64,000 bases of DNA from positions 142,258-206,257 of the IMG/VR virus record IMGVR_UViG_3300045961_000282, one strand, 5' to 3'. Made by a program: the position numbers and the translations under genes. Within the stretch, counting starts at the first letter, position 1, and each line of letters begins with the position of its first letter. Under the pieces are notes generated by a model. The model was given only the letters and a program-made list of their open reading frames with translations. It did no database searches and was not told the DNA's origin. Positions 45,678 through 55,032 of this stretch are shown here, piece after piece.

Positions 45678-46031
45678 ATGAGCACGATGAGCATCGAGTC
45701 CGAGGGCCGCATGTGGGTCCACGCCGAACTGCCCGAGGGCGTCGCGGGACGACCGGGCTACCAACTCGGCTGCCGCTGCGGCGACTGCGTGGAGGCCAAC
45801 CGGGCCTACATGCGGGAGTACCGCGCTCGGATGCAGCACACCAAGCAGCGCTCCGATGGCACGGCTGAGTACCACTCGCACAAGGGCCAGCCCTCCAAGC
45901 GCACGGCCCGCAGGTGGGGCTGCACGCACTCGCAGTGCCTCGCCAAGGCGGGCCTGCGCCTGAACGACGAGGGCGTCGTGGTCGATGCCGTGACCGGCGT
46001 GGTCGATGCCCACTTCGGTGAGGCGGCGTGA
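45678..46031 (+). CDS. Zn-finger protein (GCRCGDC)
   Basis: Motif shared with the 10742 gene; own promoter. Confidence 0.75.
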   Translation: MSTMSIESEGRMWVHAELPEGVAGRPGYQLGCRCGDCVEANRAYMREYRARMQHTKQRSDGTAEYHSHKGQPSKRTARRWGCTHSQCLAKAGLRLNDEGVVVDAVTGVVDAHFGEAA

Positions 46032-46375
46032 TCACGGCGGTCGCGTGGCGGCAGGTGCGCATGGCGCTGGTGGATGACCACATCCTGTTCGGCACGCGGG
46101 TGATCCGTGCGCACTACAAGGGCGGCTCCGCAGTCTGGCGCTTCCTCGTCCACGACTTCGGCACCCCCGAGGAAGCGCGGCGGTACGCAGTCGAGTGCAC
46201 GGCCACCCTCGAACGGGAGGGCGCGACTCTGGTCCCCCCGGTCGCGTTCGGCCTACGCCGCGCAGACGAGGAACGACTGAGCGCCTTGGCCACGGAGGTC
46301 TGGGTCCCTTGCGCGGACGACAGCCCCGAGGTCGCGGCGATCACCCGCGTGCTGAGCAAGGGCAAGAAACTCTGA
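46028..46375 (+). CDS. Divergent WGR-like paralogue 1
   Basis: EEARRYAVECTATLEREG..L.PP aligns with the 46445 gene. Confidence 0.6.
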   Translation: MITAVAWRQVRMALVDDHILFGTRVIRAHYKGGSAVWRFLVHDFGTPEEARRYAVECTATLEREGATLVPPVAFGLRRADEERLSALATEVWVPCADDSPEVAAITRVLSKGKKL

Positions 46376-46444
46376 TTTGACCTGAGCCACGTCTAGGGCT
46401 TATGGTTCTACCAACACCACAACTACGAACGAAGGGAGCACGAC

Positions 46445-46801
46445 ATGAGCACCATCGCTTACGGATGGGAACTGACCGCCCCGAGCACATCGGGTGGCAA
46501 GGTCTACCAGATCACGGTGATCGACAACATCATCGTCACGGGCTGGGGATCGACCAGCACCACCACGCGCCAGTTCATGGTCGAGGCGCACGTCGATTCC
46601 CAGTGGGCCAGCCGCTGGGCTGTGGAGCGCACCGCCGAGAAGGAGTCGCGCGGCTACTCGCTGACCACCCCGCCGCACGCCCATGAGATCGACCCGGCGA
46701 TGCTGGGCGAACTGCGGCGTATGGTTGGCCACCGCGGCGCCAGCGCCCGGCTCCAACAGGCGTTCAACCTGCTGATCCAGCACGGACGCACGGCAGCCTG
46801 A
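46445..46801 (+). CDS. WGR-domain-like protein
   Basis: KVYQI....IVTGWGS...Q......A......EKESRGY. Confidence 0.7.
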   Translation: MSTIAYGWELTAPSTSGGKVYQITVIDNIIVTGWGSTSTTTRQFMVEAHVDSQWASRWAVERTAEKESRGYSLTTPPHAHEIDPAMLGELRRMVGHRGASARLQQAFNLLIQHGRTAA

Positions 46802-46904
46802 GCACGAACCAAACGGATTTGACCCGTGTCAGAGCGGGATGCTATGCTTCTGGCACAACGAACAACCGAACACAATGACCACCACTACGGAAAGGATCAC
46901 CACC

Positions 46905-47861
46905 ATGCCCACCACCACCCCCACCACCCCCGGCGCGCAGACCGTTGCCGATGCCCTGTCCCGCTTCACGGCGGGCACCATGACCCCCCCGGCTGCTGCG
47001 GCTGCCGCGACCCCCACGACCCCCCCGGTCGCCACTGGCTCGCGCATCTCGTTCCCCCGCCCGAACGGCGAGGCGTACTACCCGCGCATCGTGGACGGCT
47101 CCACGCACGACGTGGCGCTGCTGCGCTCGGCGCGCGGCTCGGTGCTGACCGACAACCTGTACGTCCTGCTCTACGGCGAGCCGGGCACGGGCAAGACGGC
47201 TGCCTTTGAGGCGGCGTTCCCCGATGGCCTCACGCTGTCCGGTGACGGCGACACGACCACCGACGACTTCGTGGGGTCGTGGGTCCAGAACCCTGACGGC
47301 ACCTACGAGTGGGTCGACGGCCCGCTCATCATCGCGATGGAGAACGGCCTGCCGTTCCTCATTGACGAGGTTGCCCTGATCGACACGAAGGTCATGGCCC
47401 TCGTCTACTCCGCGATGGACGGGCGCGGCGAGATTCGCATCAAGGCCAACCCGGCGCGCGGCATCATCAAGGCGCAGCCCGGCTTCTACGTCGTCGGTGC
47501 CTGCAACCCGAACGCCCCCGGCGCTCGCATGTCCGAGGCGCTCACGTCGCGGTTCAGCCTGCACATCGAAGCCACCACGGACTACGACCTTGCCAAGGCA
47601 ATCGGCGTCCCGGCCAAGGCGATCACGGTCGCGAAGAACCTCGACTCCAAGCGGTCGTCGGGCGAGGTCGCGTGGGCGCCCCAGATGCGCGAGTTGCTCG
47701 CCTTCAAGCGCACGTCCGAGCGGTTCAGCGTCGGCATGGCCGTGGCGAACCTGATCGGCATTGCCCCCGAGGACGACCGGGCAATCGTGGCCGACGTGGT
47801 GAGCCGTGCCTTCGGCGCGGCAGTCGCTAACCTGCGGCAGGGCGCAGCGGCCACGGCCTGA
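46905..47861 (+). CDS. MoxR/CbbQ-type AAA+ ATPase
   Basis: GEPGTGKT, WVDGPL..AM..G..FLIDE, ACNP, SEALTSRF, MRELL. Confidence 0.92.
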   Translation: MPTTTPTTPGAQTVADALSRFTAGTMTPPAAAAAATPTTPPVATGSRISFPRPNGEAYYPRIVDGSTHDVALLRSARGSVLTDNLYVLLYGEPGTGKTAAFEAAFPDGLTLSGDGDTTTDDFVGSWVQNPDGTYEWVDGPLIIAMENGLPFLIDEVALIDTKVMALVYSAMDGRGEIRIKANPARGIIKAQPGFYVVGACNPNAPGARMSEALTSRFSLHIEATTDYDLAKAIGVPAKAITVAKNLDSKRSSGEVAWAPQMRELLAFKRTSERFSVGMAVANLIGIAPEDDRAIVADVVSRAFGAAVANLRQGAAATA

Positions 47862-47961
47862 CCCTCCCGTGGCCGGGAGCAGATTTGACTCCCGGCCACG
47901 GTGGGGCGTATGCTTTTGACACGAACCAAACACCACTACTACGAACACGAAAGGACACCCC

Positions 47962-48321
47962 ATGACAGACAAGGCAGTGTGCTGGGAACTCCAGTCCAGC
48001 AGCGACTCCATCCACGGCCTGCGCGTGCTGCTCGTCGGCACGTTCGTCGGCACGCAGTTGCTCAGTAGCGAGAACGAGCGGCCCCGCTGGTCGTTCCGCG
48101 AGTACGCAACCGTGACCGGCGCAGGCGAAGCCGCCGTCGAGTTCACGCAGAACTTTGAGCGCGACCACGGGGGCCGACTGGTGATCCCGCCCGGCGAGAT
48201 TCTGGTCCACCCCTCCGAGGTCGCCAACCTGCACAGCCACGGGCCGATCCCGCCCTCGCTGCGCGCTCGGGTGTTCACGTCCTTGCAGCGGCGCGACCCC
48301 CGGGAAGGGGGTGCGTCGTGA
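47962..48321 (+). CDS. Divergent WGR-like paralogue 3
   Basis: AGEAAVEFTQNFER..G.LVIPP. Confidence 0.6.
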   Translation: MTDKAVCWELQSSSDSIHGLRVLLVGTFVGTQLLSSENERPRWSFREYATVTGAGEAAVEFTQNFERDHGGRLVIPPGEILVHPSEVANLHSHGPIPPSLRARVFTSLQRRDPREGGAS

Positions 48322-48668
48322 GCAAGCCCAAGCCCAATCAGGGCCTCGCGTGGAGCATCGCCTGCGACAACGACCTTGAGGTTGTGATCGTCGTGGCGGG
48401 CAAGTGCATCCTGCTCAACTCCAAGGAGTCCTCGGGCACCGCCCCGTGGCGACTCGGGTACTACCCCGACTCCGACGAGGCGCACCTGCGGGCGGTCGAG
48501 ATGACCGGCTCGTATGAGCGCCTTCGGGCGGGCAAGGTGAGCCAGCCCGTCATGGTGACCCTGCCCGAGAAGAAGTGGGTCGCCACCGTCGAGTCGGGCA
48601 CCGTGGACGATCAGGTGATCGAAGCCGTCCTGCGGGCTCTGACCCGTGTGGATTTGACGGACGACTGA
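48318..48668 (+). CDS. Divergent WGR-like paralogue 4
   Basis: EAHLRAVEMTGSYER..G....P. Confidence 0.6.
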   Translation: MSKPKPNQGLAWSIACDNDLEVVIVVAGKCILLNSKESSGTAPWRLGYYPDSDEAHLRAVEMTGSYERLRAGKVSQPVMVTLPEKKWVATVESGTVDDQVIEAVLRALTRVDLTDD

Positions 48669-48803
48669 CACCGTGCCTATACTTGAGGCACAGAACGACG
48701 CAGCAACCTGACTGGGGTCCGATCCCCCGATTTGACCCCAGTCGGGTTCTGTGCCTAAGATAGTCACCACAAGCACCACCACCACCACGAAAGGAGAACG
48801 ACA

Positions 48804-50648
48804 ATGACCTACAACCCCCGCAACCTCGCCTCATGGTGGGCGTCGATGCAGAAGGCCGATGCCCGCGAGTGGGTTCGCGTGTCGGCTGAGACTGGCGACT
48901 TCCTGCGCACCCTGTCGGGCCGCGAGGACCTGCTCGCCGTGGTCGAGCCGGGCATCTGTGCCGACAAGGGCGCGCCCGCCGTCTACCTGCCCGAGAAGGC
49001 CCACGTCGAGGTCAACCCCGACAAGTGCGCCACTGGGATCGCCCCCGCCGATATCTCCATGACCACTGAGGTCGCTCGGCTGCGGCACCCCGCCCTGACC
49101 GGCGCGTCGGTGCATGAGGGCGCTCACGCGATGGTGTCCCAGTGGGAACTCGACCAGACCCCCGCGCGCCGCCGCGTGGTGCAGGCTGCCCTGCTGTTGG
49201 AGGAATCCCGCGCCGAGAAGCACATGGTCGAGTCCAACCCCGAGACTCGGGTGTTCCTGCGGGCCGCGTTCACCGATCTGGTCAACGCTTCGGGCGAGAT
49301 GCCCGAGGACGTGCACGGCGCGGCGCACCTTGCCGCCCTGTCGCTGGGCCGGGCCGACGCAGGCGTGCTCGACCACGCCGAGGTCGCAGACCTTCGGGCC
49401 GACCTTGTGGCCATTCTGGGCGAGGACCTGCTCGACTCCCTGCGGGCCGTGTGGCTCGACGCGCACGCCCTGCGTGACCACCGCGACAAGGAGGCGATGG
49501 AGGCGCTGGGCCAGCGCTGGATCGACCTGCTGCCCGAGCCTGAGGCCGAGAGCGCCGAGGGCGGGATCACCGTGATCGTCTGCGGAATGCCTTCCTCCGG
49601 TGGCTCTGGCGGCGGCGAGGGTTCCGAGGACGAGTCCGAGGGCTCTGGCTCTGGCGACTCCGAGGGTTCCGAGGGGTCCGAGGGCAAGGGGTCCGGTTCG
49701 CTGGGCCGCTTGGCCGAGGCCGTGGCCGCTGCCGCCGAGGCCGAGGCTGAGGCGCAGGTGGACGGGGCCAAGGTCCGCGACGAGGCCGAGCGCCGCGCCG
49801 TGGCTGCCAAGTCCGACCGCGAGGCGTCCAAGGCCGCTGAGAAGGTGTTCAGCGACGAGATTGGCCACGGCCACGGCTACGGCTACGGGGAGGGCGTCAA
49901 GGGGTCCGAGGCTCCGTCTGTCAAGGTTCGCGCGACGGCCAACCGGCTCGCCCGCGCGATCCAGAAGGCGCAGTTCCGCGACCGCTCCAAGACCGTGCTC
50001 TCTGCGTCCGTCCCGCCCGGTCGGCTCAAGTCGTCGGCGGCAGTGAGGCGCAGCGCGCAGCAGTCGCAGGGCATCCCCGTCACGGCTGAGCCGTGGCGCC
50101 AGACCGTGCGCAAGCACGTCGATCAGCCCCCGGTGACGGTCGGCATCATGGTCGATATCAGCGGGTCGATGCGCTGGGCCGAGCAGCCCGTCGCGGAACT
50201 CGCGTGGTCCATCGCCCACGCCGTGAACCGGAACGAGGGCACCACGGCGACGGTGGCCTACGGCGAGCGCGTGCACGCCGTGACCAAGCCGGGCGAGTCC
50301 CCGAAGGCGATGCGCACGTTCGATGCGTCGGGCGGCACCGAGGAAGTCGCCGGGGCGCTCAAGGCCCTCGACGGCGGGCTGCACCTGACCAACGGGCGCG
50401 GCGTGCGGATGCTGGTCAACGTCAGCGACGGCCAGTACACGCACTCGCAGCGCGAGAAGGCAACGGCGATCCTGCGGCGCATGACGGCCAACGGCGTCAA
50501 GGTGCTCTGGATCGACGCTGACGGCGGCGGCTGGGCGGGGACCACCCCCATCACGATGCCCGGCGTGACGACCGTCAAGGTCAAGCGCGGGGCCGATCTG
50601 GCCGACGTGCTCGCCCCCGCGATCACCAAGGCGCTGTCCGAGGCGTGA
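48804..50648 (+). CDS. VWA-domain protein with N-terminal HExxH metallopeptidase-like domain (MoxR partner)
   Basis: HEGAH...LLEESR, G/S/E-rich linker, MIDAS VDISGSM, GGT, VSDG. Confidence 0.88.
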   Translation: MTYNPRNLASWWASMQKADAREWVRVSAETGDFLRTLSGREDLLAVVEPGICADKGAPAVYLPEKAHVEVNPDKCATGIAPADISMTTEVARLRHPALTGASVHEGAHAMVSQWELDQTPARRRVVQAALLLEESRAEKHMVESNPETRVFLRAAFTDLVNASGEMPEDVHGAAHLAALSLGRADAGVLDHAEVADLRADLVAILGEDLLDSLRAVWLDAHALRDHRDKEAMEALGQRWIDLLPEPEAESAEGGITVIVCGMPSSGGSGGGEGSEDESEGSGSGDSEGSEGSEGKGSGSLGRLAEAVAAAAEAEAEAQVDGAKVRDEAERRAVAAKSDREASKAAEKVFSDEIGHGHGYGYGEGVKGSEAPSVKVRATANRLARAIQKAQFRDRSKTVLSASVPPGRLKSSAAVRRSAQQSQGIPVTAEPWRQTVRKHVDQPPVTVGIMVDISGSMRWAEQPVAELAWSIAHAVNRNEGTTATVAYGERVHAVTKPGESPKAMRTFDASGGTEEVAGALKALDGGLHLTNGRGVRMLVNVSDGQYTHSQREKATAILRRMTANGVKVLWIDADGGGWAGTTPITMPGVTTVKVKRGADLADVLAPAITKALSEA

Positions 50649-51767: not shown

Positions 51768-54044
51768 ATGAGCATTTCCGCAGCACTCCGCGATGCGGAG
51801 CCCTTCCTCTCTCCTAGCGAGGAAGACGACCTTGACGGCGGCGCCACTGCGACGTCATTCGCCCTGAACCGCACCTATGTGGACGGCGGCACCTTCCAGT
51901 GGGCCTATGAGTTGCTCCGCAACGTCGAGCAGTTGTTCGACCGCATGGTCGCTGCTGGCGAGGACACCTCCAAGGTCGGAATGTGGTTTGACCACGTGCA
52001 GATCGAGGTGCTGAACACCGAGGGCGACGTCATCGCCAAGCCGCTCCTGCGTCGCGTCTGGAACATCGGAACTCCGATGGACCCTGAGACAGAGTTGCTG
52101 AGGTACTACACGCGACTCAACCTCGGCGGCGGAACCAAACGCTGGAGCCCCGTCAACCTGAATGCCCCCTATGGCATGGGTTCCCGCGCGGCACTTCTGG
52201 GCTGGACCGACACCATGTTCGTCACCAGCGTGCCGGGCAAGGGATCCTTCGGCATCACCCTGCGTGGCGTGACCGACGAGAATGGCAACATCACCTACTC
52301 CCAGACTCGTCCCGTTCTCTACGACGAGGACGGCGGCTTCACCGTCTCGCTCTCTCCGATGGTCAAGTTGGCCCACGAGGATGATGACGTGTACTACCTG
52401 CGCTCCCATGGCGGTACGTCCATCGCCCTGACTGAGGACCTTCTCGACGAGCAAGTCCGGGAGCACGGTGGATTCACGCAGATCATGTTGGGCCGCGGGG
52501 ACTACACCAAGGACGTGTTTGTCGACACGACCCCTGCCAAGAAAGAGACCTCGGCGGGCATCATCCCTGCTATCTCTGACCGCTTCAGGATGGGCAAGTT
52601 CCCCGTCGTGGCGGAGACCATCTTTGAGCCTAAGGAGGGCCACAAGGGCGTCGCTCGCGAGTGGACCCTGTCCGACGGCACGAAGGTCCGCGGCAACCGC
52701 CGGGCGCTCAAGAAGTTTTCCGACTGGACTGACCGTGCGGAGCGGCTCAAGGATGTCCCGGTCGATGGCTACGGGACCAAGGTGACTCCGTACCTGCTGC
52801 CTGAGGACTATTGGCACACGGGTTCCTACACCAAGGAAGAGCGCGACGCGGAGGCGGCCAAGGACCCGAAGGCGGTGTTCGAGTACCGCTCGGACGGCAC
52901 CTACGGCAAGTTGAACGTGAAGGACATCGACACGATGCATCCGTTCAAGGGGCAGGGTCAGGTCGTTGTTGCCTTCAACTCCGAGTTGTACGCTGTCAAA
53001 GAGCCCGGCCTGCGTGGCCGTGCGAGCATCCTTTCTGCGTGGGGCATCCCGCAGGAGCGTGTCGCCCGCAGTGTGCTGCTGGTCATCACTCCGCCCGTGC
53101 TGGACAGCATCGAATCCGAGGATTGGGGCATCACTCAAAACGGGGCGCGGTCCAACATCACAGCGAAGAATGGCGAGAGCCTGCCGTTCAACTCATGGCA
53201 GGCTGAGTTCATCGAGTACTTCCCGAAGGAGATCGGCGATCGGCTGGCCGTGCGCCCACCATCGACGTCCAAGTTGATCGCCGAGGAGGACATCGCGAAG
53301 ATGGAGCAGCGCGTCTTTGGTGAGTCGACGTCCACGCCAAAGACCCCTGCTCGGATTGTCATCGACGAGAAGGGCAAGGTCGACGGGGAGCCCACCGATG
53401 GCACCATCGCGACCTCACAGGGCCACGGCAAGGGCAAGGGCAACGGGGGTGGGCCGTCCAGCGGTCCGAGCCAGACGGCAGTCGAGAAGACTGGTGGCGG
53501 GTTCAAGACGGCGCGCCGCCGCCCCAAGCGCCCCACCCCCCCGCAACCCGAGTTCCTGACTGGGCAGCAGTGGCGGGATGCGGGTTATGACGCCGACCTG
53601 TTCTGCGTGGTTTCCGAGGCGGGCCAGATGTTCACCATCGAGTTGAACGGCGCCCACCGCGTCATGGAGCGTCAGGTGAAGTACTTCTGGGACGACACTG
53701 TCCACGGACACTGGTCTGACGCGAAGCGCGCCAAGACCCGCGCGAAGATTCTTGTCGCTGCTGGCGGGAAGAGCACTCCCGGTGCGGACGAGAAGGCCAA
53801 GTTGGCGGCCATCGAGGAGATCGAGTACGTGTACCGCTTCGACGCTCTGGCCACCTTCATCGGCGCTCAGAGCGGCTACCTGAACGCAGATGGATCGGTC
53901 GATACGGTCGGGTTCATGAAGTTGTTCAGGGACGAGGAGGGTGACCCGACCAAGACCATGACGGTCAGCCTCGCCGCTATCCACCCGCAGGAAGAGGCCA
54001 TCAAGTCGCGCCTCAACTCGCTGGCCGGACGGTCCAGCATCTAG
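51768..54044 (+). CDS. Large protein with a divergent GHKL (HATPase/MORC-like) N-terminal domain
   Basis: ELLRN (motif I), NIGTPM (degenerate DxGxGM), YGMGSRAA (motif III); 758 aa. Confidence 0.6.
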   Translation: MSISAALRDAEPFLSPSEEDDLDGGATATSFALNRTYVDGGTFQWAYELLRNVEQLFDRMVAAGEDTSKVGMWFDHVQIEVLNTEGDVIAKPLLRRVWNIGTPMDPETELLRYYTRLNLGGGTKRWSPVNLNAPYGMGSRAALLGWTDTMFVTSVPGKGSFGITLRGVTDENGNITYSQTRPVLYDEDGGFTVSLSPMVKLAHEDDDVYYLRSHGGTSIALTEDLLDEQVREHGGFTQIMLGRGDYTKDVFVDTTPAKKETSAGIIPAISDRFRMGKFPVVAETIFEPKEGHKGVAREWTLSDGTKVRGNRRALKKFSDWTDRAERLKDVPVDGYGTKVTPYLLPEDYWHTGSYTKEERDAEAAKDPKAVFEYRSDGTYGKLNVKDIDTMHPFKGQGQVVVAFNSELYAVKEPGLRGRASILSAWGIPQERVARSVLLVITPPVLDSIESEDWGITQNGARSNITAKNGESLPFNSWQAEFIEYFPKEIGDRLAVRPPSTSKLIAEEDIAKMEQRVFGESTSTPKTPARIVIDEKGKVDGEPTDGTIATSQGHGKGKGNGGGPSSGPSQTAVEKTGGGFKTARRRPKRPTPPQPEFLTGQQWRDAGYDADLFCVVSEAGQMFTIELNGAHRVMERQVKYFWDDTVHGHWSDAKRAKTRAKILVAAGGKSTPGADEKAKLAAIEEIEYVYRFDALATFIGAQSGYLNADGSVDTVGFMKLFRDEEGDPTKTMTVSLAAIHPQEEAIKSRLNSLAGRSSI

Positions 54045-54060
54045 CAGTAGATGAGACAAT

Positions 54061-54088
54061 AGCCCCAGCCCTGTGATGGGCTGGGGCT
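54061..54088 (+). terminator. Intrinsic terminator-like hairpin
   Basis: AGCCCCAGCCC-TGTGAT-GGGCTGGGGCT. Confidence 0.6.
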
Positions 54089-54111
54089 ATTGTCCTTCCC
54101 GAGGAGCCACG

Positions 54112-55032
54112 TTGACAGGCGAGATCACTGCACCGTTCCCATATACCGGCGGAAAGAGACGCATTGCAGCGACAGTGTGGGAGGCTCTCGGAAATCCATA
54201 CTCCTACATCGAACCATTTGGCGGATCACTGGCAGTTCTTCTTGCGGCACCACGACCTGCTGGGTTCGAGGTCGTCAACGATTCCAATCACTTCGTCACC
54301 AACTTCTGGCGCGCAATCCGAGACGACTGGAGAGATGTTCTAGACGTAGCACAGGATCCTGTGACCGAGGCGGATTTCAAGGCTCGACACCTGTGGCTGA
54401 TGACCGAAGGAACTGCTCGTCTTCAGGAACTGGATATGGTTCGCAACCCATTTGCTTACGATCCCCTCGTTGCGGGATGGTGGGCATGGGGACAGAGTCT
54501 GGCGATCTGGCAATGGTGCCTTCCGGGGGCTGATGGAACTCCGGGAGCCATGGGTGGATTGAATCAACGCCCCGATGTACGAATCGGAAAGGGAATCCTC
54601 ACTTCGACCCCTCAGGAAATCCAGCGTCTAGCGGCTCGGCTTCGCCACGTTCGAGTCCTCTGCGGAGACTGGAAAAGGGCGCTGGGCAACGGCGTTCTCC
54701 TGCTCGAACAAAGGCGGGAAGACAAGGTCACTGCTGTCTTCTTGGATCCCCCGTATCGACCTCACATGCGTGATCCGAACGCATACGGAGCCGTGGACGA
54801 GACGAAGGCTCCGCTTGTCGACAACGACACCGTAGAAGCATGGTGCCGGGGAAATGGATCAGATCCCCGACTGCGCATCGTTCTCGCCGGGCTAGAGGGG
54901 GAGTATGAACTTCCAGGCTGGCGACAGGTGGCGTGGAAAGCCCCTCAGGCAAATCCAGAGAACCGCGACGCTGAGCGACTTTGGCTGTCGCCGCACTGTC
55001 TCACATCAACCACGCAAGAAGCCTTGTTCTAA
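54112..55032 (+). CDS. D12-class DNA adenine methyltransferase
   Basis: PFPYTGGK, YIEPFGGS, EVVND, FLDPPY; GAGGAG RBS before TTG; lower GC. Confidence 0.88.
   Translation: MTGEITAPFPYTGGKRRIAATVWEALGNPYSYIEPFGGSLAVLLAAPRPAGFEVVNDSNHFVTNFWRAIRDDWRDVLDVAQDPVTEADFKARHLWLMTEGTARLQELDMVRNPFAYDPLVAGWWAWGQSLAIWQWCLPGADGTPGAMGGLNQRPDVRIGKGILTSTPQEIQRLAARLRHVRVLCGDWKRALGNGVLLLEQRREDKVTAVFLDPPYRPHMRDPNAYGAVDETKAPLVDNDTVEAWCRGNGSDPRLRIVLAGLEGEYELPGWRQVAWKAPQANPENRDAERLWLSPHCLTSTTQEALF

What the first reader, a model, noticed from the sequence alone, without database searches (positions are those of the whole stretch)
46028..50648. MoxR AAA+ / metallopeptidase-VWA module interleaved with four divergent WGR-like paralogues
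Seen: four 115-119 aa ORFs (46028, 46445, 47962, 48318) share an early Trp, beta-rich segments and A...AVExT...E....g..l..P (AVECT, AVERT, AVEFT, AVEMT). Only 46445 keeps a recognisable WGR pattern. They flank the ATPase and separate it from the HExxH-VWA gene. Known: MoxR ATPases work with VWA adaptors, and WGR domains bind nucleic acids. Inference: an undescribed remodelling or proteolysis system with a diversified set of targeting subunits or substrates, possibly anti-defence.
Basis: partly seen in the sequence, partly recalled or inferred. Interest (0 to 1): 0.75.

Follow-up and report, generated by a model that had tools for sequence, protein, structure and literature searches.

The report
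Phage AAA-VWA motor with WGR-fold partners
A large phage of high-GC bacteria carries the widespread but unexplained viral "CobS/CobT-like" ATPase-adaptor pair together with four fast-diverging small proteins of the WGR fold, a conserved arrangement that gives the first candidate partners for this enigmatic viral motor.

Summary
Four ORFs of 115-119 aa (46028, 46445, 47962, 48318) are real genes and true paralogues. Subfamily profile-profile comparisons give 95.6-98.7% probability. An AlphaFold model of the 47962 protein (pLDDT 94) matches WGR domains best. Only the 46445 type links to Pfam WGR by sequence, through relatives.

They flank a MoxR-class AAA+ ATPase and separate it from a protein with three parts: a CobT-like N-domain with an invariant HExxH...E motif, an acidic linker, and a NorD/Rea1-like VWA domain with a complete MIDAS site.

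The order [s1/s2-like x1-4]-AAA-s3-s4-VWA recurs in all 13 metagenomic contigs fetched through small-ORF homologues. Their ATPases form one clade. A Streptomyces linear plasmid carries a simpler WGR-AAA-VWA triad, and E. coli yehF...yehL-yehP is a cellular precedent.

The AAA/HExxH-VWA pair itself is the known viral "cobST" cluster, so it is not new. The dedicated WGR-fold subunits appear undescribed.

Most likely this is a remodelling motor whose small proteins are adaptors or clients. s3 and s4 are the conserved core, and s1 and s2 are fast-evolving, copy-variable specificity subunits. An anti-defence role and proteolysis are untested.

Verdict: new variant of a known kind, moderate interest.

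The parts
45678..46031 (+). Upstream 117-aa Cys-rich ORF. It is not WGR-like. Its stop overlaps the s1 start by 4 nt, so it is probably co-transcribed with s1.
   Evidence: ORF list. The start at 45678 follows a Shine-Dalgarno sequence. A 117-aa gene sits at the same position in L004 (243-596). There is only a weak PHROG 8936 hit and no Pfam hit.
46028..46375 (+). s1: 115-aa WGR-fold paralogue. It is the most divergent and fastest evolving of the four.
   Evidence: Alignments. s1 subfamily hhalign against s2, s3 and s4 gives 98.7%, 97.2% and 98.2%. It is 32% identical to its L004 orthologue, dN/dS 0.71.
46374..46444 (+). Promoter-like cassette (GATTTGAC, 18-nt spacer, TATGGT) followed by a CA-rich leader and a Shine-Dalgarno sequence, in front of s2.
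46445..46801 (+). s2: 118-aa paralogue that keeps a W-G-S remnant of the WGR motif. It is the member linked to Pfam WGR through its relatives.
   Evidence: phmmer matches to L016 and L014 ORFs at 5.5e-7 and 2e-4; two members of alignment A3, presumably these two, match Pfam WGR. All 21 WGR-positive proteins among 80 family members fall in this subfamily. A family profile aligns to the E. coli YehF WGR at E 1.3e-5.
46816..46904 (+). Promoter-like cassette plus leader in front of the ATPase gene.
46905..47861 (+). MoxR-class AAA+ ATPase (AAA_5). The mechanical ORF starts at 46839; 46905 is the probable real start.
   Evidence: Pfam AAA_5 at 58.4 bits against a cut-off of 22. PHROG 16448 'ATPase' at 6e-54 and PHROG 249 (phage CobS-like) at 7.7e-23. 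Walker A GEPGTGKT and Walker B DE are invariant. The nearest solved relatives are midasin, CbbQ and NorQ.
47882..47961 (+). Promoter-like cassette plus leader in front of s3.
47962..48321 (+). s3: 119-aa WGR-fold protein with a conserved C-terminal IPPSLRAR helix. It is a fixed core partner located between the AAA and VWA genes.
   Evidence: AF2 model with pLDDT 94.2 and pTM 0.87. The best structural matches are WGR domains. It has 21 subfamily representatives. It is 69% identical to its L004 orthologue, dN/dS 0.32.
48318..48668 (+). s4: 116-aa acidic WGR-fold paralogue. Its start overlaps the s3 stop, which suggests translational coupling.
48651..48803 (+). Two promoter-like cassettes (48651 and 48729) plus leader and Shine-Dalgarno sequence in front of the VWA gene.
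48804..50648 (+). 614-aa CobT/NorD-like adaptor. It has an N-domain (aa 20-245), a disordered acidic linker (aa 248-297), a long helix (aa 299-349) and a VWA domain (aa 364-614).
   Evidence: AF2 model. The VWA domain is nearest to NorD and Rea1/MDN1 MIDAS domains. The N-domain has TM 0.9 to actinobacterial VWA_CoxE proteins and about 0.65 to CobT. Pfam VWA_CoxE matches 14 of 21 homologues.
49113..49127 (+). HEGAH (H104, E105, H108), a zincin-type motif. A downstream LEESRAE segment holds E133, E134 and E138.
   Evidence: H104, E105, H108 and E133 are invariant in 28 sequences, including viral cobT-like proteins only 9-16% identical.
50154..50168 (+). MIDAS motif D451-I-S453-G-S455. T512 and D542 complete the site.
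   Evidence: D451, S453, G454, S455 and D542 are invariant in 21 homologues; T512 is nearly invariant.

Best explanation
This is a phage version of a MoxR-AAA+/VWA remodelling motor, of the viral 'CobS/CobT-like' kind, that has acquired its own small WGR-fold subunits.

Motor, by analogy with solved relatives. In CobST and NorQD the ATPase forms a hexamer. The N-domain of the adaptor docks on its rim, and the VWA domain sits over the pore on a flexible acidic linker. The MIDAS metal site grips an acidic residue of a partner, so ATP-driven movement is passed on to that partner. I propose the same layout here.

Small proteins (inferred):
- s3 and s4 are always encoded between the motor genes and evolve at the same pace as the VWA protein. 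I propose they are fixed core partners that dock on the motor. A likely contact surface is the conserved face of their long helix (A54, A58, T62, E66 in s3 numbering). The near-invariant Glu is a candidate MIDAS ligand, as in the Rea1-MIDAS/UBL pairing.
- s1 and s2, upstream, are copy-variable and fast evolving. I propose they are exchangeable specificity or sensor subunits that select the target. s2 keeps part of the WGR signature.

The target is more likely a host protein or nucleoprotein complex handled in one temporal class of infection than cobalamin synthesis.

Shown: gene reality, paralogy, the WGR fold of s3, an intact ATPase, MIDAS and HExxH motifs, and conserved synteny in one clade.
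Inferred: physical association, the Glu-MIDAS contact, adaptor versus client roles, and the target.
For: Paralogy and fold.

Synteny. The order [s1/s2-like x1-4]-AAA-s3-s4-VWA, or the part of it that fits on the contig, appears in L004, L005, L059/L060, L062-L070 and L082. That is every contig reached through small-ORF homologues that had context.

One origin. The ATPases of these loci form one clade (UFBoot 94, SH-aLRT 88; one change in 92% of bootstrap trees), nested among phage AAA-VWA pairs without interleaved genes.

Simpler triads elsewhere. A Streptomyces linear plasmid has an annotated 'WGR domain-containing protein' directly upstream of AAA and an HExxH-VWA gene. In E. coli, yehF (WGR) lies near yehL (MoxR), yehP (VWA) and yehQ.

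Motor competence. Walker A and B motifs are conserved. The MIDAS residues D451, S453, S455 and D542 are invariant and T512 nearly so. The architecture is CobT/NorD-like. The mechanism of these motors is described in PMC13036017 and bioRxiv 10.64898/2026.10.09.757910.

Rate asymmetry between the window and L004. Amino-acid identities are AAA 88%, VWA 81%, s3 69%, s4 66%, s2 59% and s1 32%. dN/dS values are 0.17, 0.31, 0.32, 0.38, 0.58 and 0.71.

Co-regulation. One promoter-leader cassette type precedes each unit. There are 5 sigma-70-like sites in 7 kb against 0.4 expected, and 12 GATTTGAC sites in the window, all on the + strand, against 1.1 expected.

Against a cobalamin role: the phage has no CobN or B12-dependent RNR, and there is no match to curated CobS or CobT models.
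Against: - No physical interaction was tested, and no multimer model could be run.
- Each small gene has its own promoter-like site. Co-location could therefore reflect a shared temporal class rather than a complex.
- In the sister clade, s2-like WGR genes lie 1-12 kb from the AAA-VWA pair or are not found. One short WGR homologue sits in a phage contig with no ATPase within 8 kb on the side that could be read. WGR proteins can therefore exist apart from the motor.
- The Glu proposed as MIDAS ligand is conserved in the s1, s3 and s4 types but not across the whole s2 subfamily.
- The s1/s3/s4 profile has no direct sequence match to a canonical WGR, E. coli YehF. Their WGR assignment rests on one model and on transitive homology.
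- The dN/dS values are rough. They use the Nei-Gojobori method on a high-GC genome, with dS near 1 for s1.
Confidence: 0.45

Rival explanations
1. ATP-driven protease. The HExxH...E N-domain is an active zincin. The motor and VWA domain unfold or present substrates to it. The WGR-fold proteins are either targeting adaptors or are themselves processed.
For: H104, E105, H108 and E133 are invariant even between viral proteins only 9-16% identical. This argues for a functional metal site. There is weak structural resemblance to Peptidase_M78, DUF2201_N and MPTase-PolyVal clusters (TM 0.40; feature score 0.80-0.81).
Against: No peptidase family or solved peptidase matched the N-domain profile. Its best structural relatives are CobT and CoxE-type N-domains. 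In CobST that domain is a scaffold that binds the small AAA domain. The metal site could be structural. The geometry of the motif in the model was not inspected.
Confidence: 0.2
2. Cobalamin booster. The pair is a true viral CobS/CobT that hijacks host CobN to raise B12 synthesis. The small ORFs are unrelated neighbours.
For: This is the published hypothesis for viral cobST clusters (PMC8651126). PHROG 249 'porphyrin biosynthesis' matches at 7.7e-23. The N-domain resembles CobT (TM about 0.65), and one related viral cluster carries Pfam CobT in 15% of its members.
Against: There is no hit to NCBIfam or Pfam CobS, CobT or CobT_C models. The phage has no CobN or NrdJ. It does not explain why four paralogous genes are kept in fixed positions inside the pair in 13 contigs. 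The same triad occurs on a Streptomyces plasmid next to a methylase and a ribonuclease, not cob genes.
Confidence: 0.12
3. Independent small nucleic-acid-binding proteins. The WGR-fold proteins bind DNA ends or nicks, as PARP WGR domains do. They act on their own, for example to protect phage DNA or block host repair, and are merely co-located with the motor in one early-gene block.
For: The WGR domains of PARP1 and PARP2 recognise DNA breaks (titles and abstracts listed). Each unit has its own promoter-like site. s2-like genes occur away from the motor in sister phages. s1 and s2 are mildly basic (pI 7.8 and 8.2).
Against: The W-G-R motif is absent in s1, s3 and s4 and incomplete in s2. s3 and s4 are acidic. 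s3 and s4 always lie between the two motor genes, and s2 lies directly upstream of AAA on phage contigs and on a plasmid.
Confidence: 0.13
4. Virion or other phage-complex assembly chaperone. As reported for the MoxR/VWA pair of Acidianus two-tailed virus, the motor matures a phage structure and the small proteins are assembly factors or clients.
For: A MoxR-VWA role in archaeal virus tail development is cited in PMC7159879 and PMC9964418. MoxR motors generally mature dedicated complexes (abstracts).
Against: The module lies among small ORFan genes with a shared early-type promoter cassette and a DNA methylase. It is not among recognisable structural genes. The Streptomyces plasmid triad has no virion context.
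Confidence: 0.08

Closest known systems
Viral cobS/cobT ('cobST') gene pair of tailed phages and archaeal viruses
   Same: A MoxR-class AAA+ gene is followed by a gene for an N-domain with HExxH, a linker and a VWA-MIDAS domain. PHROG 249 matches the ATPase. Distant viral loci L025-L051 keep HExxH near aa 60 plus a MIDAS site. The literature notes that cobT is often annotated as a peptidase.
   Different: Here, and in one clade only, the pair is split by two WGR-fold genes and preceded by one to four more. The proteins do not reach curated CobS or CobT models. The function of the viral pair is itself unproven.
Bacterial MoxR/VWA motors with solved complexes: NorQ-NorD, CobS-CobT, CbbQ-CbbO, and Rea1/midasin MIDAS with UBL partners
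   Same: The ATPase profile is nearest to midasin, CbbQ and NorQ. The VWA domain is nearest to NorD and Rea1/MDN1 MIDAS domains (Foldseek E about 1e-6; VIA Z 17-18). The N-domain, flexible linker and VWA layout is as in CobT.
   Different: The clients of those motors are large enzymes or ribosome assembly factors encoded elsewhere. Here the candidate partners are four small paralogues encoded inside the module. The invariant HExxH is not mentioned for CobT (0 occurrences). Whether bacterial CobT has it was not tested.
E. coli yehF-yehH-yehI-yehK-yehL-yehM-yehP-yehQ neighbourhood (YehL subfamily of MoxR ATPases)
   Same: A WGR protein (YehF, annotated as a PF05406 family protein) lies in one gene cluster with a MoxR ATPase and a VWA protein. 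The small-protein family profile aligns to the YehF WGR at E 1.3e-5.
   Different: YehL is only about 25% identical to the phage ATPase over 223 aligned residues. That cluster also has DUF4132, YehM and SWIM proteins, which are absent here. YehF is 274 aa. The s1/s3/s4 profile does not match YehF. The function of the yeh cluster is unknown.
WGR-AAA-VWA triad on Streptomyces sp. NBC_00239 linear plasmid (NZ_CP108096.1)
   Same: An annotated 'WGR domain-containing protein' of 132 aa (s2-type, 3e-16) lies directly upstream of an AAA ATPase and a 597-aa HExxH-VWA protein. The ATPase DNA is about 69% identical over 380 nt.
   Different: It has only one WGR gene, and the AAA and VWA genes overlap with nothing between them. 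The replicon is a plasmid, not a phage.
WGR domain of PARP1, PARP2 and PARP3 and of bacterial protein 2RA8
   Same: The s3 model superposes best on 2ra8_A residues 1-76 (Z 7.5), then on PARP1 and PARP3 WGR domains (Z 5.4-5.7). 2ra8 residues 3-71 are a WGR by sequence. 10 of the top 25 AFDB fold clusters are named WGR.
   Different: There is no Pfam WGR match for any of the four. The W-G-R motif is lost in three. A two-helix C-terminal extension is added. The Z-scores are modest. The proteins are stand-alone rather than modules of a larger enzyme.

Membership tests
WGR domain (Pfam PF05406) | Significant match to the Pfam WGR model | tested here: not met
   None of the four matches at E<=1. The six-frame genome search gives no match at E<=10. 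21 of 80 family members match (best 5.2e-13), all of the s2 type. 0 of 35 s1/s3/s4-type proteins match.
WGR domain (Pfam PF05406) | WGR fold: antiparallel beta-sheet packed against one long helix, about 75-80 aa | tested here: met
   This was tested for s3 only. The AF2 model has pLDDT 94 and four strands, a helix, then a fifth strand. The top PDB matches are 2ra8 residues 1-76 (Z 7.5) and PARP1 and PARP3 WGR domains (Z 5.4-5.7). The AFDB top hits are named WGR. For s1, s2 and s4 the fold is inferred from profile homology; they were not folded.
WGR domain (Pfam PF05406) | Conserved Trp-Gly-Arg motif | tested here: not met
   s2 has W-G-S. s1, s3 and s4 have no W-G at the aligned position.
WGR domain (Pfam PF05406) | Nucleic-acid (DNA break) binding | not testable with these tools
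   This needs gel-shift or a similar assay. s3 and s4 are acidic (pI 6.2 and 5.0) and s1 and s2 are near neutral to basic.
MoxR-class AAA+ ATPase (Pfam AAA_5) | AAA_5 match above the gathering score, with intact Walker A and B motifs | tested here: met
   58.4 bits against a cut-off of 22. GEPGTGKT and the DE of Walker B are invariant in six homologues. The nearest solved chains are midasin, CbbQ and NorQ.
MoxR-class AAA+ ATPase (Pfam AAA_5) | Genomic pairing with a VWA-MIDAS protein | tested here: met
   A VWA gene follows the ATPase in the window and in every related locus long enough to show it.
Aerobic cobaltochelatase CobS/CobT | Match to curated CobS (NCBIfam, Pfam CobS_N) and CobT (Pfam CobT, CobT_C) models | tested here: not met
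   No such family is listed for the ATPase or the VWA protein. None is listed among the 21 homologues. The only links are a structural N-domain similarity of TM about 0.65 and a viral cluster with Pfam CobT in 15% of its members.
Aerobic cobaltochelatase CobS/CobT | Works with the catalytic subunit CobN | tested here: inconclusive
   There is no CobN in the 99%-complete phage genome. The host genome is unknown, so hijacking of a host CobN cannot be excluded.
Viral cobST-like pair (PMC8651126) | Phage-encoded AAA+ gene followed by an HExxH-bearing VWA/MIDAS gene | tested here: met
   PHROG 249 matches at 7.7e-23. The same HExxH-plus-MIDAS layout is found in 22 more distant viral loci. H104, E105, H108 and E133 are invariant across both groups.
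CobT/NorD-type VWA adaptor | N-terminal helical domain, long flexible linker, and C-terminal VWA domain with a complete MIDAS (DxSxS...T...D) | tested here: met
   Model domains and the disordered stretch at aa 248-297. D451, S453, S455 and D542 are invariant and T512 is nearly invariant. NorD and Rea1-MIDAS are the best VWA matches. CobT, NorD and CoxE-type clusters match over the full length.
Zincin metallopeptidase | HExxH plus a downstream third ligand | tested here: met
   HEGAH at aa 104-108 and E133, E134 and E138, conserved across 28 sequences.
Zincin metallopeptidase | Similarity in sequence or fold to a known peptidase family | tested here: not met
   The N-domain profile finds nothing in the PDB (best E 0.52, spurious). 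There is no significant Pfam family. There is only TM 0.40 to a Peptidase_M78/MPTase cluster. The domain was not folded and searched on its own, so this is a weak negative.
Known anti-phage defence or candidate systems (PADLOC-DB 2.0) | Match to any PADLOC protein model | tested here: not met
   The only hits are P-loop-level matches to IetA at E 0.04-0.05. The other five proteins have none.

The most novel reading that the evidence does not exclude
The module is a phage counter-defence or host-takeover machine. A MoxR-VWA motor with a zincin-like domain uses interchangeable, rapidly diversifying WGR-fold adaptors to capture specific host proteins or nucleoprotein complexes, such as DNA-end or repair and defence factors, and then remodels or cleaves them. 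If so, the function long assigned to viral 'cobST' genes, cobalamin synthesis, would be wrong for at least this lineage.
Probability: 0.15. Interest if true: 0.8.

Novelty: new variant of a known kind. Interest (0 to 1): 0.55.

Why it matters
Viral cobS/cobT-like genes are core genes of cyanophages and occur in phages of many hosts, yet their role is only guessed at. This clade encodes what look like dedicated partner proteins inside the pair. That turns an open question into an experiment: express six proteins, see what binds what, and find the target.

It also does three other things:
- It extends the WGR fold to a family of about 76 sequence clusters of small, stand-alone proteins, mostly from metagenomes. 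Three of its four subfamilies escape Pfam and PHROGs.
- It links phage modules to uncharacterised cellular WGR-MoxR-VWA neighbourhoods, namely the E. coli yeh cluster and a Streptomyces plasmid.
- The Streptomyces plasmid triad offers a culturable system in which to test the simplest form of the module.

Tried and rejected
- Direct family searches of the four small proteins gave nothing useful: Pfam, PHROGs and PADLOC, tblastn of s2 against 50,697 phage records, and the ESM Atlas for s4 (scores at most 0.80, uninformative).
- An early 12-sequence profile against PDB sequences gave only chance hits.
- The search for related loci with the single ATPase found nothing. The broad small-protein alignments had no searchable stretch. 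The s3 alignment found nothing in IMG/VR beyond the window's own record and five loci in JGI metagenomes.
- Megablast of 24 kb of the window found no close cultured phage.
- I asked whether GodonK gp106 (227 aa, between AAA and VWA) is a fused s3-s4. There was no similarity, so this was rejected.
- Pumpernickel gp226, upstream of its ATPase, gave only a weak, non-significant resemblance to the s3 C-terminal half (hmmscan 4e-6; hhalign 18% probability). I did not count it.
- The s1/s3/s4 profile against the E. coli YehF WGR gave no match.
- A search for RNA evidence found only the source DNA run, from a freshwater sediment metagenome.
It was rerun with permitted rows only.
- Whole-model fold searches of the 614-aa protein were dominated by the VWA domain, so the N-domain fold could not be compared with peptidases.
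- Literature searches for WGR with MoxR/VWA, WGR with phage, and phage AAA+/VWA with anti-defence found no description of this arrangement.

Full report
**Setting.** The window is the last 64 kb of a 206,257-bp virus record that CheckV rates 99% complete. It has about 65% G+C. Its only DNA-level relatives are the ATPase genes of Gordonia, Microbacterium and 'Actinomycetia' phages and of Streptomyces plasmids. The only sequencing run that holds the region is a freshwater sediment metagenome. All genes discussed here are on the + strand. The 648-aa ORF on the opposite strand (46842-48788) lies across four genes that have homologues and ribosome-binding sites. I take it to be a shadow ORF of a G+C-rich sequence.

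**Observation.** The four small ones are called s1 (46028), s2 (46445), s3 (47962) and s4 (48318) here. They align in register and share an early Trp and the A...AVExT...E...P motif. Pairwise BLAST between them is weak, so I looked for relatives.
- A contig 59-88% identical at the protein level (L004) keeps all six genes in the same order. A shorter contig (L005) keeps three.
- phmmer from s3 hits the L004 s4 orthologue, and s4 hits the L004 s1 orthologue.
- A profile search of 1.84 billion representative proteins returned 76 clusters, all but one of 80-137 aa.
- These clusters fall into four subfamilies, one per window gene, joined in a single BLAST component by intermediates such as P0009, P0041, P0017 and P0012.
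- Profile-profile comparison of separately aligned subfamilies gives 95.6-98.7% probability for all six pairs, over nearly the full length.

The four genes are therefore paralogues. There are exactly four copies in the genome.

**Are they WGR?** By sequence, only s2 is linked, and only indirectly.
- None of the four matches Pfam WGR.
- 21 of 80 family members do match (best 5.2e-13). WGR is the only Pfam family found, and all the matches are in the s2 subfamily.
- The whole-family profile aligns to the WGR of E. coli YehF (E 1.3e-5). The s1/s3/s4 profile does not.

By structure, the link extends to s3.
- The AlphaFold model built on 35 homologues is very confident (pLDDT 94.2, pTM 0.87). It has four strands, a long helix, a fifth strand and two extra C-terminal helices.
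- An independent scan of 48,161 solved chains ranks 2ra8_A residues 1-76 first (Z 7.5). Next come the WGR domains of PARP1 (2cr9, 4dqy, 7s68) and PARP3 (2eoc) at Z 5.4-5.7.
- 2ra8 residues 3-71 are a WGR by sequence to YehF (1.7e-15).
- 10 of the 25 best AlphaFold-DB fold clusters are named WGR.
- The Z-scores are modest, and Foldseek E-values are 5e-3 at best. I treat the fold as WGR-like and membership of the Pfam family as not met.

The W-G-R motif survives only as W-G-S in s2.

**The motor.** The ATPase is a MoxR-class AAA_5 protein with intact Walker motifs. Its nearest solved relatives are midasin, CbbQ and NorQ. Its start is probably 46905.

The 614-aa protein has four modelled parts:
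- A well-modelled helical N-domain (aa 20-245).
- A disordered Gly/Ser/Glu/Asp linker (aa 248-297).
- A long helix (aa 299-349).
- A VWA domain (aa 364-614).

The VWA domain is closest to NorD and to Rea1/MDN1 MIDAS domains and has a complete MIDAS site. The N-domain superposes at TM about 0.9 on actinobacterial VWA_CoxE-type proteins and at about 0.65 on CobT.

H104, E105, H108 and E133 are invariant in 28 sequences. These include viral proteins only 9-16% identical that follow a more distant CobS-like ATPase. This is the viral 'cobST' pair described in PMC8651126, where cobT is said to be often mis-annotated as a peptidase. It does not reach the curated CobS or CobT models. The phage has neither CobN nor a B12-dependent reductase. 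No peptidase family or fold matched the N-domain. 'Metallopeptidase' therefore remains a motif-level statement.

**Conservation of the arrangement.** Every contig reached through homologues of the small proteins that had any context shows the same order, or the part of it that fits on the contig:
- one to four s1/s2-like genes;
- the ATPase;
- s3, then s4;
- the VWA gene.

One contig (L059) has four upstream copies, six paralogues in all. The ATPases of these loci form one clade. It is nested among about 20 phage loci in which the VWA gene follows the ATPase directly, and it is sister to Gordonia phage GodonK. The interleaving therefore arose once.

In the sister group, s2-like WGR genes occur in about half of the (mostly incomplete) records, 1-12 kb from the pair. 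A Streptomyces linear plasmid has an annotated WGR gene directly upstream of an overlapping AAA/HExxH-VWA pair. E. coli K-12 has yehF (WGR) in the yehL (MoxR)-yehP (VWA) cluster. The association of a WGR protein with a MoxR-VWA pair is thus wider than this phage. The multiplied, interleaved form is specific to the clade.

**Evolutionary rates and regulation.** Between the window and L004, amino-acid identity falls from 88% (AAA) and 81% (VWA) to 69%, 66%, 59% and 32% for s3, s4, s2 and s1. Rough dN/dS values are 0.17, 0.31, 0.32, 0.38, 0.58 and 0.71. s3 and s4 behave like the adaptor, while s1 and s2 are much freer.

Each intergenic gap carries the same roughly 75-nt cassette: GATTTGAC, 17-18 nt, TAnnnT, a CA-rich leader and a strong Shine-Dalgarno sequence.
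- There are five promoter-like sites in 7 kb against 0.4 expected.
- There are 12 GATTTGAC sites in the window, all on the + strand, against 1.1 expected.
- 13 of 14 extended cassettes in the whole genome lie within 19 kb around the module.

The likely transcription units are [upstream ORF-s1], [s2], [AAA], [s3-s4] and [VWA], all of one promoter class.

**Interpretation.** I commit to this reading at about 45%. The module is a MoxR-VWA remodelling motor whose partners are the WGR-fold proteins. s3 and s4 are fixed subunits. s1 and s2 are exchangeable specificity subunits. The conserved helix face (A54, A58, T62, E66 in s3), with its near-invariant Glu, is a candidate MIDAS ligand, by analogy with Rea1-MIDAS/UBL and with the CobST and NorQD mechanism.

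The steps that are shown and those that are inferred are listed under the best explanation. The rivals are an active protease, a true cobaltochelatase helper, independent DNA-binding proteins, and an assembly chaperone. None of them is excluded.

**Verdict.** The pair is known. The dedicated WGR-fold paralogue set appears undescribed in the searched literature. I rate it a new variant of a known kind, with moderate interest.

Noticed in passing
window 45601, 46374, 46816, 47882, 48651, 48729 (also 16876, 37815, 40149, 41234, 51503, 55340): A repeated promoter-leader cassette, always on the + strand: GATTTGAC, 17-18 nt, TAnnnT, a CA-rich ACCACCACC leader, then CGAAAGGAG about 6 nt before the ATG. 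There are 12 GATTTGAC sites against 1.1 expected. 13 of 14 extended cassettes in the 206-kb genome lie in one 19-kb block. It probably marks one temporal class of phage promoters.
   Followed up: partly
window 46842-48788, minus strand: A 648-aa ORF runs antisense across the AAA, s3 and s4 genes. The + strand genes have homologues and ribosome-binding sites, so this looks like a shadow ORF of G+C-rich DNA.
   Followed up: partly
window 45678-46031: A 117-aa Cys-rich ORF (CRCGDC...) whose stop overlaps the s1 start. A gene of the same size holds the same position in L004. There is only a weak PHROG 8936 hit. It may belong to the module.
   Followed up: partly
window 51768-54044 and 54073-55032: A 758-aa ORF with no Pfam, PHROG or NCBIfam match is followed by a 319-aa protein of which only the N-terminal 70 residues match Dam/D12-class DNA methyltransferases. 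The Streptomyces plasmid triad also has a DNA methylase nearby.
   Followed up: no
L083 (NZ_CP108096.1 41841-45041): A Streptomyces sp. NBC_00239 linear plasmid carries a compact WGR-AAA-VWA (HExxH) triad, preceded by a divergently oriented HTH regulator gene and followed, after one hypothetical gene, by an RNB-domain ribonuclease gene. It is a culturable system for testing the simplest form of the module.
   Followed up: partly
L002 (Microbacterium phage Pumpernickel, genes 226-228): The gene after the ATPase aligns poorly with the HExxH-VWA family and lacks both motifs in the alignment. One protein of that alignment matched HATPase_c_3. The gene before the ATPase weakly resembles the s3 C-terminal half. 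This lineage may have swapped partners.
   Followed up: partly
L059 5252-6857 (JGI 3300009146 contig): Four consecutive s1/s2-like genes lie upstream of the ATPase, against two in the window. This shows copy-number expansion of the fast-evolving paralogues.
   Followed up: partly
window 48651-48761: The gap between s4 and the VWA gene holds two promoter-like cassettes 78 nt apart, where the other gaps hold one.
   Followed up: no
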